DNA of 64,000 nt, from NCBI RefSeq assembly GCF_003704095.1, contig NW_020845620.1, positions 1-64,000 on the forward strand, in the 5' to 3' direction. This DNA is from Pocillopora damicornis (taxonomy: Eukaryota). The first letter of the stretch is position 1. Every line of letters begins with the position of its first letter. Position numbers and translations under genes: made by a program. This document shows positions 45,495 to 49,812 of this stretch, one piece after another. The notes beneath the pieces were generated by a model, which had not been told where the DNA came from, made no database searches, and saw nothing but the letters and a program-made list of their open reading frames with translations.

Positions 45495-46743
45495 TTAGAG
45501 TATGTCTTTCATGTATTTCACTTCATCTCCTGATAGCGCTTTATCAACTACAAGAAGATCTCTCATGTACCCATCAGAAGTCGGAAAATGCATTCTGTCT
45601 CGTTTCAACCCAATGTCGAAAACTGTATGATTATTTTCGATCAGGTCTAAAGGACCATTAGAAACTCTACTTCCACCCCTTCTAATTCCATCTACGTACA
45701 GAATTCCCTCTTTTCTATCTCGACTCCAAGTGAACGCCACGTGCATCCATCTATTGGGGATGACCTTCCTTTGATTATGAGAGAACAGAACACAAAAGGG
45801 AATGAGGCTTTGCGCAAATCTCCGCTTCTCAATGTACCTCTTAGGAAGGTAAATCACTCTGGGATACACACTTGAGTGCTCTAGGTGTCTCTTCCTATTT
45901 ATTAATTGCACGTAGGAAAAGAAAAGATGTATCTTATGCACCTACCAGCGACAGAAATAAACCATAGTAAGTCCACGTGGATGATGAGGTTTTCGAAGTT
46001 GAGCACAAATTCGACGCCAACCATAAATAAAGATTCTGAACTGATTTGGTTCTGACCAGTCGGAATAGATATGAACTGGAAGAGTACTTGGAAGGCTCAA
46101 AACCTTTATCCAACACATGATACTAAAGCTGATAGCTCGGATCGGGAGTGCTGGGGTTTCTGCGTAGGAATGCCGGGATCCACTCAAGTACAGTACTTTC
46201 CTGCCATCAGTATTTCGATAGGAAGCGCCATTGTACAAACTTTTCAATTCATGAAAATAATGGAAATACATTCGTTATAATGCCAACCATACCATATGGA
46301 ATCCTCTTTACAGGTAGCTGAATGAAATGTCACCATTAACTGAAAGTATTTAACAGCATTTCAAGAAAGGCAGCTTAATGATCCTCTCCACTATTTATTT
46401 TGCGAGAAACTCTAAGAAGATATTTGAAATTCATGTGAAAAAATTGGGGAAATAGCCATAGCAAACGCGGCAAAATAACCGTAAATTTTTGTTGGCTGCA
46501 ATGCATTTTAGAATTATTAAAAGTTAAAACTTTCATCTGTCAAAGCCGTTGTATTATGACTTTTATGCCCTGTACTCAAAACAATAACTCATTGAAACTA
46601 GAGTTTATCCATAATTATAAGCAGGAGTGTGAACTTTTCACAATGATAGTGTTCCGACAATTTCTTCCTGGAAGAAGAAAGCGTTCTCTCATCTTACCTT
46701 ATATTTGGATCAGACCCATTGAGTGCCCAATGAAAACGAAATC
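45495..46743 (-). CDS. LamG-domain gene copy B (three 3' exons; upstream exons lost in gap or absent)
   Basis: Exons 46743-46698 ([14 protein letters not shown]), 46239-45946, 45768-45495. Open frame, canonical splice sites. Confidence 0.8.
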
Positions 46744-47581
46744 CTTTGAATCCTTGAATTTAAAAATGAATACTGGTGTGGTTTGATCACGATTTATCAA
46801 ACATCAAACATTTTTTGCTTAAGTTTTAAAGATGTTTATAGGAGTGCGAACTAAATTTAAAGCAACTCACTTGAACGACAAGAATTCTAGAAGACAATTG
46901 GACGATTTGAAATAATTCCCGTGATGTCGTCCGAAGATCCACAAACTGGTTGATGTAAACAACATATGCGGATACTACAAAGCACCAACTATAGTTGAGC
47001 ACAAGTGGGATAACTGTATAATTTTAAGCTCATGAACCTTTTTTAGAGAAGACTGTTCTTAATAACTTTCATGCTTCAAAAAGGCCGTGAAAGAAATCCG
47101 TAATAAGCCTTACTAGTGGTATTGCAGGGTCCTACTATAGTGGAACTTACGGTGGATATAAACTCTTAATATAAAACGAGTTCANNNNNNNNNNNNNNNN
47201 NNNNNNNNNNNNNNNNNNNNNNNNNNNNNNNNNNNNNNNNNNNNNNNNNNNNNNNNNNNNNNNNNNNNNNNNNNNNNNNNNNNNATTGGTAATGTTCGTG
47301 CTCATATGCACCTTCCATTTTCGTAACGAGAAAACATCAAAGCTTCTAACGATTTCATTTCGAACGATCTGTAATGCCCAAACATCTCACAAACCAGAAC
47401 GTTCGATTGNNNNNNNNNNNNNNNNNNNNNNNNNNNNNNNNNNNNNNNNNNNNNNNNNNNNNNNNNNNNNNNNNNNNNNNNNNNNNNNNNNNNNNNNNNN
47501 NNNNNNNNNNNNNNNNNNNNNNNNNNNNNNNNNNNNNNNNNNNNNNNNNNNNNNNNNNNNNNNNNNNNNNNNNNNNNNNNN

Positions 47582-48179
47582 TTTTCGATCAGGTCTAAAG
47601 GACCATTAGAAACACTCTTGCTACCTTTTATAATTCCATCAATGTACAGAATTCCCTCTTTTCTATCTCGGCTCCATGTGAACGCCACGTGCATCCATTT
47701 ACTGGGGATGGTCTTCCTTTGATTATGAGAGAACAGAACACAAAAGGGAATGAGGCTTTGTGCAAATCTCCGCTTCTCAATATACCTCCTAGGAAGGTAA
47801 ATCGCTCTGGGATACACATTTGAGTGCTCTACGTGTCTCTTCCAATTTTATTAATAGCACGTAGGAAAAGAAAAGATGTATCTTATGCACTTACCAGATA
47901 CAGGGATAAACTATATCATGTCCATGAGGATTTCGAAGCTGAGCACAAATTTCATGCCAACCAGAAATATAGATTCTGAACTGATGTGGTTCTGACCAGT
48001 CAGAATAGATATGAACTTCATGATCACTTGGAAGGCTCAAAACCTTTATCCAACACATGATACTAAAGCTGATAGCTCGGATCGGGAGTGCTGGGGTTTC
48101 TGCGTAGGAATGCCGGGATCCATTCAAGTACAGTACTTTCCTGCTATCAGTATTTTGATAGGAAGCACCATTGTACAAA
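47582..48179 (-). CDS. LamG-domain gene copy C (partial, gap-interrupted)
   Basis: Exons 48179-47895 (SLYNGASY...DIVYPCIW) and 47717-47582, which runs into a gap. Confidence 0.75.
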
Positions 48180-49077
48180 CTTTTCAATTCATGAAAATAA
48201 GGGAAATATATTTGTTAACATGCATACCATACCATCTGAAATCCTCTTTACAAGAAGTTAAATGAAATAATGTCACCATTAACTGAAAATATTTAACAGC
48301 GTTTCAAGAAAAGCAGCTTAATGATCCTCTCCGGGAAGTATTCACTGTATGAGGAAGTCAAAGGAGATTTTTGAAATTCCTGTGAAAAAATTGGGGAAAT
48401 AGCTATAGCAAACGCGGCAAAATAACCGCAGATGTTTGCTGAAACTAGAGTTTATCCACAATTATGAGTAAGAATTTGACCTATTCACAACAGTAGTGTT
48501 CGACCAGTTCTTCCTAGCAGAAGAAAGNNNNNNNNNNNNNNNNNNNNNNNNNNNNNNNNNNNNNNNNNNNNNNNNNNNNNNNNNNNNNNNNNNNNNNNNN
48601 NNNNNNNNNNNNNNNNNNNNNNNNNNNNNNNNNNNNNNNNNNNNNNNNNNNNNNNNNNNNNNNNNNNNNNNNTTTAAAGAAGGGCGAACTAAATTTAAAA
48701 CAAACTAACAATGACAAGAAGTCTCGAAAGCAAGTAATTGGACGATTTGAAGTAATTCCCCTATTTTCGTCCAGGGATCCACAAACTGCTTANNNNNNNN
48801 NNNNNNNNNNNNNNNNNNNNNNNNNNNNNNNNNNNNNNNNNNNNNNNNNNNNNNNNNNNNNNNNNNNNNNNNNNNNNNNNNNNNNNNNNNNNCCTTCGAC
48901 TTCCTCATACAGTGAATACTTCCCGGAGAGGATCATTAAGCTGTCTTTGTTGAAACGCTATTAAACATTTTCAGTTAATGGTGAAATTATTTCATTTAGC
49001 TACTTGTAAAGAGGATTTCAGATGGTATGGTATGCATGTTAACAAATCTATTTCCCTTATTTTCATGAATTGAAAAG

Positions 49078-49812
49078 TTTATACAATGGTGCTTCCTATC
49101 AAAATACTGATGGCAGGAAAGTGCTGTACTTGAATGGATCCTGGCATTCCTACGCAGAAACCCCAGCACTCCCGATCCGAGCTATCAGCTTTAGTATCAT
49201 GTGTTGGATAAAGGTTTTGAGCCTTCCAAGTAATCTTCCAGTTTATATCTATTCCGACTGGTCAGAACCGCATCAGTTCAGAATCTTTATTCAACGAAGT
49301 TATCTAATTTGTGCTAATCTTCGAAAACCTAGTGGACTTGATCGGGTTTATCTCTGTGCTGGGTAAGTGCTTAAAATAGACCTTGTCTTTTCCTACGTAA
49401 TATTAATAAATAGGAAGAGACACATAGAGGACTCAAGTGTGTATCTCAGAGCAATTTATCTTCCTAGGAAGTATACCGAGAAGCGGAGATTTGTACAAAG
49501 CCTCATTCCCTTTTGTGTTCTGTTCTCTCATAATCAAAGGAAGATCATCCCCAATGAATGGATGCACGTGGCGCTCACTTGGAGCCGAGAGAAGAAAGAG
49601 GGAATTCTGTACATTGATGGAATTATACAAGGTATCCAGAGAGTTTCTGATGGTCTTTTAAACCTGAAAAAAATAGTCATACAGTTTTCGACATTGGGTT
49701 GAAACGAGACAACACGCTTAGACCGACATTTGATGGGTACATGAGAGATCTTCTAGTGGTTGATAAAGCGTTATCAGGAGATGAAGTGAAATACATGAAA
49801 GACATACTTTAA
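49078..49812 (+). pseudogene. LamG-domain gene copy D, with a -1 frameshift in an A-run (pseudogene or sequencing error)
   Basis: Exons 49078-49362 and 49540-49812. The A7 run near 49667-49673 needs A8 to keep [13 protein letters not shown] in frame. Confidence 0.7.

What the first reader, a model, noticed from the sequence alone, without database searches (positions are those of the whole stretch)
45495..49812. Focal hypervariable patches in the LamG domain of young paralogues: candidate diversified recognition molecules
Seen: copies B, C, D and F are almost identical over SLYNGASY...[27 protein letters not shown], and B, C and D share a closely similar intron whose last 40 or so bases look identical. 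They differ sharply at fixed spots: after LPS (TLPVH / DHEVH / NLPVY / NHPVN), after QFRI (FIYGWRR / YISGWHE / FIQRSYL / FISSRAH), before the second Cys (KPHHPRGLTMVYFCRW / NPHGHDIVYPCIW / KPSGLDRVYLCAG, with in-frame indels), after YxDG (IRRGGSR / IIKGSKS / IIQGIQR) and after KRD (RMHFPTS / NTLRPTF; copy A SLSQHTF). Established: LamG/pentraxin/ConA folds bind ligands through loops on one face. Inference: coding patches that out-diverge the adjacent intron indicate diversifying selection on a binding surface, i.e. a possibly undescribed variable pattern-recognition, allorecognition, symbiont or gamete recognition family.
Basis: partly seen in the sequence, partly recalled or inferred. Interest (0 to 1): 0.85.

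Follow-up and report, generated by a model that had tools for sequence, protein, structure and literature searches.

The report
Coral LamG genes with hypervariable loops
A reef coral (Pocillopora) carries a cluster of expressed genes for secreted PAN-EGF-LamG proteins in which five short patches of the lectin-like domain change amino acids about four times faster than silent sites. This is the signature of a family selected for varied binding, but what it binds is unknown.

Summary

- **Corrections.** The last intron is 177 nt, shown by RNA joints, so the stretch read as 'YIEKRRF...HNQR' is intron. Copy D carries a 1-nt frameshift in this assembly only. Copy C loses its last ~45 codons in a gap. 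Two 100-N gaps are unit junctions that hide the 5' exons.
- **The genes are real.** B is spliced in polyA RNA from two studies. Its transcript runs on into an EGF exon that is absent from the assembly. Full-length relatives read signal peptide-PAN-EGF x3-LamG_3 and are annotated only as 'uncharacterized'.
- **Selection.** With nine further copies (a P. meandrina genome and Tara Pacific metagenomes), the patches show 129 nonsynonymous against 10 synonymous steps (omega ~4.4, P=3e-8). By maximum likelihood omega is 3.6 (P=1e-4). The framework gives 0.4-0.7.
- **Exchange.** Copies also swap segments with one another.
- **Untested.** Whether the patches form one face, and what the ligand is.

I read this as a new LamG_3-based case of a known kind, a diversified invertebrate recognition family. 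The scan has already noted other hypervariable families on other DNA of this genome.

The parts
29748..34877 (+). Copy A. Older, complete paralogue: PAN exons, 4-5 EGF exons, a 46-nt linker exon (33156-33201), LamG exon 1 (about 33873-34154) and the last exon (about 34609-34877). LamG part about 55% identical to B.
   Evidence: tblastn with the full-length homologue P0005. Reading of the exon borders.
46698..46752 (-). Copy B, 55-nt linker exon ([19 protein letters not shown]), first strand of the LamG_3 domain.
   Evidence: RNA joint 46239/46698 in run X5. Loose ends in X5, X16 and X17 at 46753 continue into an EGF exon end (..GDGFLCV) that is not in the assembly.
45946..46239 (-). Copy B, LamG exon 1 (97 codons plus split codons). 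Intact.
   Evidence: Translation. An RNA contig of X5 covers 45945-46134 with no mismatch.
46071..46085 (-). Patch 1 in B (TLPVH), loop between strands 6 and 7.
   Evidence: 0 synonymous and 12 nonsynonymous steps. Secondary-structure map.
46011..46031 (-). Patch 2 in B (FIYGWRR), hairpin of strands 8 and 9. F has +6 nt here.
   Evidence: omega about 4.0. Alignment.
45946..45992 (-). Patch 3 in B (KPHHPRGLTMVYFCRW), the loop between strands 9 and 10 plus strand 10. In-frame indels of +9, +6 and +3 nt among copies.
   Evidence: omega about 3.6, P=0.001. Alignment.
45769..45945 (-). Copy B, true last intron (177 nt, GT..AG).
   Evidence: Joint 45767/45945 in polyA RNA runs X5 and X17. The same acceptor is used in the P. 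meandrina model P0154 and fits P0005.
45495..45768 (-). Copy B, last exon (90 codons plus stop). Pfam Laminin_G_3.
   Evidence: Pfam E=9e-11. Translation. RNA contigs.
45666..45686 (-). Patch 4 in B (IRRGGSR), hairpin of strands 12 and 13 plus strand 13.
   Evidence: omega about 4.7. The same positions vary among 15 Tara Pacific sequences that are at least 90% alike.
45576..45596 (-). Patch 5 in B (RMHFPTS), loop between strands 14 and 15.
   Evidence: omega about 4.4. D and its P. meandrina orthologue differ at about 8 of 18 nt here and almost nowhere else.
47895..48179 (-). Copy C, LamG exon 1. Intact.
   Evidence: Tara scaffold T22 (L022) is its near-identical counterpart.
47582..47716 (-). 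Copy C, first 45 codons of the last exon. The rest is lost in the gap 47410-47581.
49078..49362 (+). Copy D, LamG exon 1. Intact.
49540..49812 (+). Copy D, last exon. The A7 run at 49667-49673 shifts the frame in this assembly.
   Evidence: The P. meandrina orthologue has A8 and an open frame. A DNA contig of run X1 adds one A at 49666.
56481..60219 (-). Copy E. PAN exon (60106-60219), EGF exons (58192-58320 and 57565-57702), linker exon (57073-57127) and LamG exon 1 (56481-56603), which is cut by the gap 56381-56480.
61989..64000 (+). Copy F. PAN exons (61989-62102 and 62249-62359), EGF exon (62730-62858), linker exon (63465-63519) and LamG exon 1 from 63767. Exon 1 runs past the window end to contig position 64060. 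The last exon lies at contig positions 64795-65068. Intact.
24652..24924 (-). Decayed relic of a LamG last exon, with two internal stops.

Best explanation
The region belongs to a birth-and-death cluster of at least seven genes for secreted proteins of about 430 residues: signal peptide, PAN/apple domain, three EGF modules (two calcium-binding type) and a C-terminal LamG_3 (ConA-like) jelly roll.

- **Framework.** The beta-sandwich core is held by purifying selection.
- **Variable parts.** A defined set of loops and hairpins is driven to change by positive, diversifying selection. These are the loops between strands 4-5, 6-7, 9-10, 10-11, 13-14 and 14-15, the 8-9 hairpin, and strands 10 and 13. 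Change comes through amino-acid replacements and in-frame indels.
- **Exchange.** Short segments are exchanged among the tandem and inverted paralogues.

Most likely each copy or allele offers a different binding specificity on the variable side of the LamG_3 domain, while the conserved PAN-EGF part docks it to a host partner. That would make it a soluble, germline-diversified recognition or bridging protein for variable ligands such as microbial or symbiont surfaces.

**Shown:** the genes, their splicing and expression, the selection pattern and the mosaicism.
**Inferred:** that the variable parts form a binding site, and the nature of the ligand.
For: **Architecture.**
- A Logan-assembled contig encodes a 427-aa protein (P0166) with a signal-like N-terminus.
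- Pfam finds EGF_3, EGF_CA and Laminin_G_3. PAN_1 passes its cut-off in three family members.
- Copy A and the P. meandrina D orthologue have all the exons.

**Expression.** Spliced polyA RNA contigs match B without mismatch in X5, and X17 shows the same joint. C and D are partly covered.

**Open frames are kept.** 11 of 13 copies are open across both LamG exons, and six of the eight exon indels are multiples of 3.

**Framework under purifying selection.** In the conserved block, codon positions 1, 2 and 3 took 0.04, 0.11 and 0.50 steps per site.

**Patches under positive selection.**
- Pairwise: pN 0.37 against pS 0.165, while non-coding DNA differs by about 0.13.
- Tree parsimony: 129 nonsynonymous against 10 synonymous steps, P=3e-8.
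- Likelihood: omega 3.59, P=1e-4.
- Every patch alone gives P<=0.025.
- Replicated in unseen sequences and in the E-type clade.
- Loops grouped by structure alone give omega 4.3.
- The same positions vary among Tara Pacific sequences at least 90% alike.

**Fold.** The LamG part of the AlphaFold model has pLDDT above 90 over most of its length, and Foldseek places it among ConA-like lectin domains.

**Exchange.** T23 switches nearest relative five times at 96-99% identity. Rm=34 and the PHI-like test gives P<0.001.
Against: - No ligand, localisation or phenotype is known.
- Spatial clustering of the variable residues could not be measured. Patch 3 lies on the opposite loop parity, and several variable residues sit in strands (8-10 and 13).
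- The patches were first chosen because they vary. This ascertainment bias is only partly removed by the unseen-sequence and structure-based tests.
- Recombination and multi-nucleotide events occur: about 8 of 18 nt differ between D and its orthologue in patch 5. Such events can inflate omega tests.
- Nine of the comparison sequences come from short-read metagenome scaffolds, which can be chimeras of paralogues.
- The local assembly is broken by gaps, so copy number and order are uncertain.
- Identical alleles recur in different samples (T28 = T29; B in X5), so polymorphism is not extreme.
Confidence: 0.6

Rival explanations
1. The excess of replacements is a by-product of mutation and recombination, not of adaptive selection. 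Short gene-conversion tracts, template switching or other multi-nucleotide events, together with chimeric short-read assemblies of paralogues, pile changes into a few loops that merely tolerate them.
For: - D and its P. meandrina orthologue differ at about 8 of 18 nt in patch 5 while the neighbouring exon is nearly identical.
- The same patch-5 variant (SINK) occurs in D-type, C-type and E-type backgrounds.
- Mosaic copies, Rm=34.
- A Tara scaffold (T24) carries a tandem duplicate of the variable half of exon 1.
Against: - Third positions inside the patches change at 0.62-0.93 steps per site, close to non-coding DNA (0.36-0.60). Positions 1 and 2 change at 0.86-1.5, so the local mutation input is not raised enough.
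- Random replacement would give about 75% nonsynonymous steps, not 93%.
- Shuffling existing variants does not change their N:S ratio.
- No donor copies of D's patch variants exist elsewhere in the genome.
- The window's own assembly, a separate P. meandrina genome assembly and RNA contigs show the same variants.
Confidence: 0.15
2. The copies are decaying or half-dead duplicates under relaxed constraint, and the patches are simply the least constrained parts.
For: - D is frameshifted in this assembly and T30 carries a 1-nt deletion.
- A relic with stops lies at 24652-24924.
- B, C and D lack 5' exons in the assembled DNA.
- Overall exon identity is about the same as intron identity.
Against: - Relaxation gives omega near 1, not 3.6-4.4.
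- The framework is strongly constrained.
- B is spliced and joined to an EGF exon hidden in a gap.
- D's frameshift is absent in another DNA run and in P. meandrina.
- F's 5-nt deletion turned out to be intronic.
Confidence: 0.05
3. The family is a self/non-self (allorecognition) or gamete-recognition system rather than an immune or symbiont lectin. The variable LamG face would then bind a partner of the same species.
For: - The pattern fits: tandem cluster, diversifying selection, exchange of segments, and many distinct sequences in Tara samples (a cluster of 100 members at 90% identity or more).
- No coral allorecognition gene turned up in my literature searches, and I know of none.
Against: - The proteins lack a membrane anchor.
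- Identical alleles recur across samples.
- Transcripts come from adult-colony polyA libraries, not from gametes specifically.
- Nothing links genotype to fusion or rejection.
Confidence: 0.1
4. The proteins are structural or matrix components, and the variable loops have no binding role. Change there would be driven by, for example, escape from microbial proteases or adhesins that target the protein.
For: PAN, EGF and LamG modules are common in extracellular matrix and skeletal-matrix proteins of corals.
Against: - The coral skeletal 'EGF and laminin G' proteins are neurexin-like membrane proteins with classical LamG domains, a different family.
- An escape scenario still amounts to selection at an interaction surface.
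Confidence: 0.1

Closest known systems
Laminin_G_3 / ConA-like lectin-glucanase superfamily (Pfam PF13385)
   Same: Sequence profile match and predicted jelly-roll fold. The closest solved folds are lectin-like domains: AbnA domain 4, the trans-sialidase lectin domain, and the N-terminal half of clostridial neurotoxin binding domains.
   Different: Only 12-19% identity to any solved structure. No hypervariable LamG_3 family turned up in my searches. The resemblance to toxin binding domains is at fold level only.
Neurexin / agrin / laminin LNS (classical LamG) domains with a 'hypervariable surface'
   Same: The same superfold. As I recall it (Rudenko et al. 1999, not re-read here), ligand and calcium binding and the splice inserts lie in loops at one rim (2-3, 6-7, 10-11). 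Here four of the five patches lie in loops of that parity.
   Different: In neurexins the variety comes from alternative splicing of one gene. Here it comes from germline paralogues and alleles under positive selection. Pfam gave no PF02210 or PF00054 match.
Coral lectins with variable binding regions: Millectin (Acropora), PdC-lectin (Pocillopora), tachylectin-2 (Oculina)
   Same: Secreted coral proteins whose binding region shows extensive sequence variation or positive selection, proposed to recognise symbionts and pathogens (PMC8290866; PMC2880987).
   Different: Those are C-type lectins or tachylectin propellers, with no homology to this family. Here the scaffold is LamG_3 behind PAN and EGF modules, and sugar binding is not shown.
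Snail FREPs, amphioxus VCBPs, sea-urchin Sp185/333 (diversified invertebrate immune families; my own knowledge)
   Same: Tandem multigene families with a conserved frame, hypervariable binding parts, and gene conversion or mosaicism.
   Different: Different domains. No evidence here for somatic diversification.
SVEP1 ('sushi, von Willebrand factor type A, EGF and pentraxin domain-containing protein 1-like'), the automatic NCBI name of relative P0005
   Same: EGF modules followed by a ConA-like/pentraxin-class jelly roll.
   Different: No sushi or vWA domains. The Pentaxin profile scores only 13.6 bits against a cut-off of 25. About 430 aa rather than more than 3,500. Not an orthologue.
Other hypervariable tandem families noted by this scan in the same genome (Ig-receptor kinases, TRIM-NHL, TRPA-like, TPR-CHAT, LRR, fibrinogen-like)
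   Same: The same evolutionary pattern in the same coral. TPR/CHAT genes lie next to family members in P. meandrina and Tara scaffolds.
   Different: Unrelated proteins. I did not test those reports.

Membership tests
Laminin_G_3 (PF13385, ConA-like lectin/glucanase clan) | Profile match above Pfam's gathering score | tested here: met
   B last exon alone: 42.6 bits against a cut-off of 27.6. Full-length relatives: 48.7-59.4 bits.
Laminin_G_3 (PF13385, ConA-like lectin/glucanase clan) | Two-sheet jelly-roll beta-sandwich fold | tested here: met
   AlphaFold model of homologue P0005: LamG part pLDDT above 90 over most of its length, 15 strands. Foldseek probability 1.00 to ConA-like lectin domains. 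The model is of a 53-60% identical relative, not of B itself.
Pentraxin (PF00354) | Pentaxin profile match | tested here: not met
   Best 13.6 bits against a cut-off of 25 in P0164. No match in the others.
Classical laminin G / LNS (PF00054, PF02210) | Profile match | tested here: not met
   No match at E<=0.1 in five full-length relatives.
PAN-EGF-LamG_3 secreted family of robust corals (uncharacterised loci in Stylophora, Pocillopora, Oculina) | Same domain order and exon structure, high identity | tested here: met
   P0166 has relatives at 57-78% identity over 94-99% of its length. Copy A and the D orthologue carry PAN, EGF, linker and LamG exons in order. B's RNA continues into an EGF exon. 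PAN_1 scores 21.7-28.2 bits against a cut-off of 21.4.
Diversified recognition gene family (operational class) | dN/dS above 1 confined to a subset of sites, with the frame under constraint | tested here: met
Diversified recognition gene family (operational class) | Variable sites form one exposed surface | not testable with these tools
   No coordinates are returned. Only loop assignment and parity are available.
Diversified recognition gene family (operational class) | Demonstrated binding of different ligands by different variants | not testable with these tools
   This needs experiments.
Allorecognition locus (Hydractinia Alr / Botryllus fuhc type) | Extreme allelic polymorphism at one locus, and genotype predicting fusion or rejection | not tested
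   Only hints, in both directions: 100 distinct sequences in one 90% cluster, but identical alleles in different samples.

The most novel reading that the evidence does not exclude
The cluster encodes polymorphic secreted specificity determinants of the coral. They would act either as histocompatibility (colony fusion/rejection) factors or as the host-side selectors of which symbiont or microbial strains are accepted, with the variable LamG_3 loops as the specificity code.
Probability: 0.12. Interest if true: 0.9.

Novelty: new variant of a known kind. Interest (0 to 1): 0.6.

Why it matters
Corals lack antibodies, yet they must tell pathogens, symbionts and neighbouring colonies apart. As far as I know, few of the molecules that give this specificity have been identified.

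This is a compact, expressed gene family, annotated only as 'uncharacterized', with a clear and replicated signature of selection for diversity on a lectin-type domain. The signature is conserved across Pocillopora samples from the Pacific. That gives a concrete set of about 40 residues and a handful of genes to test:
- binding arrays with recombinant domains;
- genotype against symbiont community, disease or graft outcome in the Tara Pacific material.

It also adds LamG_3 to the short list of protein scaffolds that animals have turned into germline-diversified binders.

Tried and rejected
1. **F as a pseudogene.** I first read F as a pseudogene because of a 5-nt deletion, and B as having a longer last exon. 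Both fell once homologues, the P. meandrina model and RNA joints placed the acceptor 70 nt further on. The deletion is in the polypyrimidine tract.
2. **B, C and D as 5'-truncated dead copies.** Rejected. B's RNA continues into an EGF exon that the assembly lacks, and D's orthologue is complete in a gapless contig.
3. **Framework block kept alike by gene conversion or a nucleotide-level element.** Rejected. Its third positions change at the neutral rate.
4. **A library of donor cassettes for the patches.** No other copy of D's patch 2 or patch 5 variant exists in the genome at up to 3 mismatches.
5. **Pfam on exon 1 alone.** Nothing found.
6. **Literature.** Searches for this family or for LamG hypervariability in corals found nothing relevant. 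The coral skeletal 'EGF and laminin G' proteins are a different, neurexin-like family.
7. **N-terminal half of the AlphaFold model.** Poor (pLDDT below 50), so I drew no conclusion on the PAN fold from it.
8. **Spatial clustering of variable residues.** Could not be computed, because no coordinates are available.
9. **Spliced (joined) protein models.** Not sent to any search or folding tool. Searches were exon by exon by reference, and the fold is that of the public homologue P0005. Only local scripts laid exon-wise alignments side by side.
10. **Loose read ends reaching into the gap at 47285.** Seen but not used.

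
Full report
**What the DNA is.**

The window is the first 64 kb of an 89.85-kb contig. The genome has 234 Mb in 4,393 contigs. Earlier notes of the scan call it a reef coral, probably Pocillopora. 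This fits: a 3.1-kb stretch around copy D is 97.5% identical to a Pocillopora meandrina contig.

**The copies.**

Self-comparison and tblastn find these members:
- a decayed relic at 24652-24924(-), with two stops;
- a complete older paralogue, A (29748-34877, +);
- B (-), C (-) and D (+) between 45.3 and 50 kb;
- E (-) and F (+), head to head at 56.5-65 kb.

Genome-wide, the close group B-F exists only on this contig. About ten more distant members (32-50% identical) lie on six other contigs.

**Gene structure, corrected.**

A 386-aa homologue (P0005) and a 427-aa protein from a Logan-assembled contig (P0166) show the full architecture. It reads: signal-like N-terminus, Cys-rich module, three EGF modules, then Laminin_G_3. 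The Cys-rich module scores as PAN_1 above the cut-off in three family members.

In these homologues the segment before 'KWMHVAFTW' is only about 5 residues long. The real acceptor of the last exon therefore follows the polypyrimidine tract '...ctcataatcaaag'.

RNA settles it:
- PolyA runs X5 and X17, from two studies, carry contigs joining 45767 to 45945. That is a 177-nt intron with GT..AG ends on the minus strand. X5 matches B without a single mismatch over 363 nt.
- X5 also joins 46239 to 46698, which defines a 55-nt linker exon (46698-46752).
- In three RNA runs the transcript continues upstream of that exon into sequence reading '..GDGFLCV', the end of an EGF module.
- That EGF sequence is absent from the assembly. 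The nearest match is E's EGF exon, with 2 mismatches.

So B is a transcribed, spliced, multi-exon gene whose 5' exons are hidden in a gap. F's 5-nt deletion is intronic, and F is intact.

**The gaps (tested first, as asked).**

I used B, D and F as rulers.

| Gap | N written | What the flanks show | What it hides |
|---|---|---|---|
| 47410-47581 | 172 | Colinear; about 202 nt missing | C's last ~45 codons and its stop. The frame across it cannot be known. |
| 48528-48672 | 145 | Colinear; about 153-160 nt missing | C's linker exon |
| 47185-47284 | 100 | Joins B's 5' side to C's 3' side | Unknown size; must hide several kb of 5' exons |
| 48793-48892 | 100 | Joins C and D head to head | Unknown size; must hide several kb of 5' exons |

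In P. meandrina the D orthologue needs about 2.9 kb for its 5' exons. I filled no gap and looked up none of their letters. The local order and number of copies are therefore uncertain.

A single DNA run (X1) holds B-type and C-type pieces without mismatch, and D-type pieces too. Five types in one assembly cannot all be alleles of one locus.

**Copy D.**

D has an A7 run (49667-49673) that shifts the frame. The P. meandrina orthologue has A8 and an open frame. A DNA contig of run X1 also has the extra A. The frameshift is an assembly error or a private variant.

**The observation.**

- Whole exons are as alike as introns and flanks: 84-91% against 83-95%.
- That average hides extremes. In 21-nt windows, mean pairwise difference is 0.02 in the framework block and 0.45-0.63 in the patches. 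Non-coding DNA gives 0.02-0.28.

**More sequences.**

Exon-wise searches and look-ups of the encoding contigs gave ten more genomic copies. One is the P. meandrina D orthologue. Nine come from Tara Pacific coral metagenomes; of these, T29 is identical to T28 and T30 was left out of the codon tests because of a 1-nt deletion.
- Counterparts of C (T22) and D (Pm_D) sit 1-3% from the window's copies.
- A clade matches fragment E.
- Apart from D and T30, all copies are open across both exons. Six of the eight exon indels are multiples of three.

**Selection tests.**

| Test | Patches | Rest of the domain |
|---|---|---|
| Pairwise Nei-Gojobori, window copies | pN 0.37, pS 0.165, omega 2.7 | pN 0.057, pS 0.14, omega 0.38 |
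| Codon parsimony on a 12-sequence tree, kappa taken from non-coding sites | 129 nonsynonymous against 10 synonymous steps; 74.7% nonsynonymous expected; omega ~4.4; P=3e-8 | omega ~0.7 |
| Same, only the E-type clade (its events are independent of B, C, D and F) | 24.8 against 1.2; omega ~6; P=0.007 | - |
| GY94 maximum likelihood on the fixed tree | omega 3.59; likelihood-ratio test against omega=1 gives 15.0, P=1e-4 | omega 0.64 |

Further results:
- Each patch alone gives omega 3.6 to above 8, with P between 0.001 and 0.025. Leaving out the indel-rich patch 3 gives omega 5.0, P=2e-6.
- By codon position, exon-1 patches took 1.50, 1.54 and 0.62 steps per site at positions 1, 2 and 3. Introns and flanks took 0.36-0.60.
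- The framework block took 0.04, 0.11 and 0.50.

So the framework is conserved at the protein level, not homogenised at the DNA level. The patches are not mutation hot spots: their silent rate is near neutral.

**Structure.**

I did not fold a joined model of B. I folded the public homologue P0005 with an alignment. Its LamG part has pLDDT above 90 over most of its length and 15 strands. Foldseek finds only generic ConA-like lectin domains at 12-19% identity.

Patch positions on that model:

| Patch | Position |
|---|---|
| 1 | Loop between strands 6 and 7 |
| 2 | Hairpin of strands 8 and 9 |
| 3 | Loop between strands 9 and 10, plus strand 10 |
| 4 | Hairpin of strands 12 and 13, plus strand 13 |
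| 5 | Loop between strands 14 and 15 |

The loops between strands 4-5, 10-11 and 13-14 also vary.

Grouping codons by structure alone gives:
- loops after even-numbered strands: omega 4.3, P=3.5e-5;
- loops after odd-numbered strands: omega 1.7;
- strands overall: omega 0.93, with strands 5, 11, 14 and 15 almost invariant.

In an up-and-down sandwich, loops of one parity lie at one rim. As I recall, LNS domains bind ligands at the rim of loops 2-3, 6-7 and 10-11. This is an inference only. No coordinates were available, so 'one face' remains untested.

**Exchange between copies.**

- T23 is 98% like the C type, then 99% like the E type, then 98% like C again, then 96% like B, in successive 150-column windows.
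- The dimorphism 'SKW/NRW' and the patch-5 variant 'SINK' occur on different backgrounds.
- Among 119 informative sites, Rm=34, and a PHI-like permutation test gives P<0.001.
- Fifteen Tara sequences at least 90% alike differ mostly at patches 4 and 5, in cassette-like combinations.
- D and its orthologue differ at about 8 of 18 nt in patch 5 and almost nowhere else, so multi-nucleotide replacements happen.
- No donor for D's variants exists elsewhere in the genome.

Caveat: metagenome scaffolds can be chimeric.

**What it is, and how far known.**

Full-length relatives are annotated only as 'uncharacterized protein' in Stylophora pistillata, Pocillopora verrucosa and Oculina patagonica. P. 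meandrina has 'unnamed protein product'. One relative carries the automatic name 'SVEP1-like'.

Literature searches found nothing on this family. [quoted passage not shown] Another is tachylectin-2 under positive selection (PMC2880987). These are unrelated folds.

The scan has already noted several other hypervariable tandem families on other DNA of this genome. I did not test those.

**Verdict.**

- Diversifying selection on a defined set of LamG_3 loops in real, expressed, secreted PAN-EGF-LamG_3 genes is well supported.
- A binding surface and a recognition role are the most likely reading but remain inferred.
- It is a new scaffold for a known evolutionary kind.

Noticed in passing
L024:2363-3577 (Tara Pacific scaffold, copy T24): Inside the last intron lies a tandem duplicate of about 150 nt: the variable 3' half of LamG exon 1 (patches 2 and 3) plus the start of the intron. 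It carries a different patch sequence and its own GT donor. This is either a trace of unequal exchange or an assembly artefact.
   Followed up: no
contig C2255 64095-64630 (L018:95-630), just past the window end: Copy F's last intron carries an insertion of about 535 nt that is absent from all other copies. It may be a mobile element.
   Followed up: no
window 61989-62102 and 62249-62359: The second PAN exon of copy F is present twice, 260 nt apart. Further PAN exons lie at contig positions 83447-83623(+) and 85050-85163(-), so the cluster continues beyond the window among more gaps.
   Followed up: no
window 51112-51360 (+): A weak LamG last-exon-like match (38% to P0002) lies downstream of D. 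It is probably another decayed family member.
   Followed up: no
L021:16485-17708; L023:11537-12387; L028:5985-6264: In P. meandrina and in two Tara scaffolds, the neighbours of family members are CHAT or TPR genes. The scan has separately flagged the TPR-CHAT family of this genome as hypervariable.
   Followed up: no
P0028 (274 aa): A protein with a PEP-CTERM-like tail, so presumably bacterial, is 42% identical to B's last exon over about 80 residues. This is closer than any animal classical LamG domain. It reflects the mainly bacterial make-up of the LamG_3 family, and I have no evidence of gene transfer.
   Followed up: no
window 45300-45494, 49813-50000, 47285-47409: The 3' flanks of the copies stay 86-95% alike for several hundred nt past the stop and are covered by RNA contigs. 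They look like a shared 3' UTR.
   Followed up: partly
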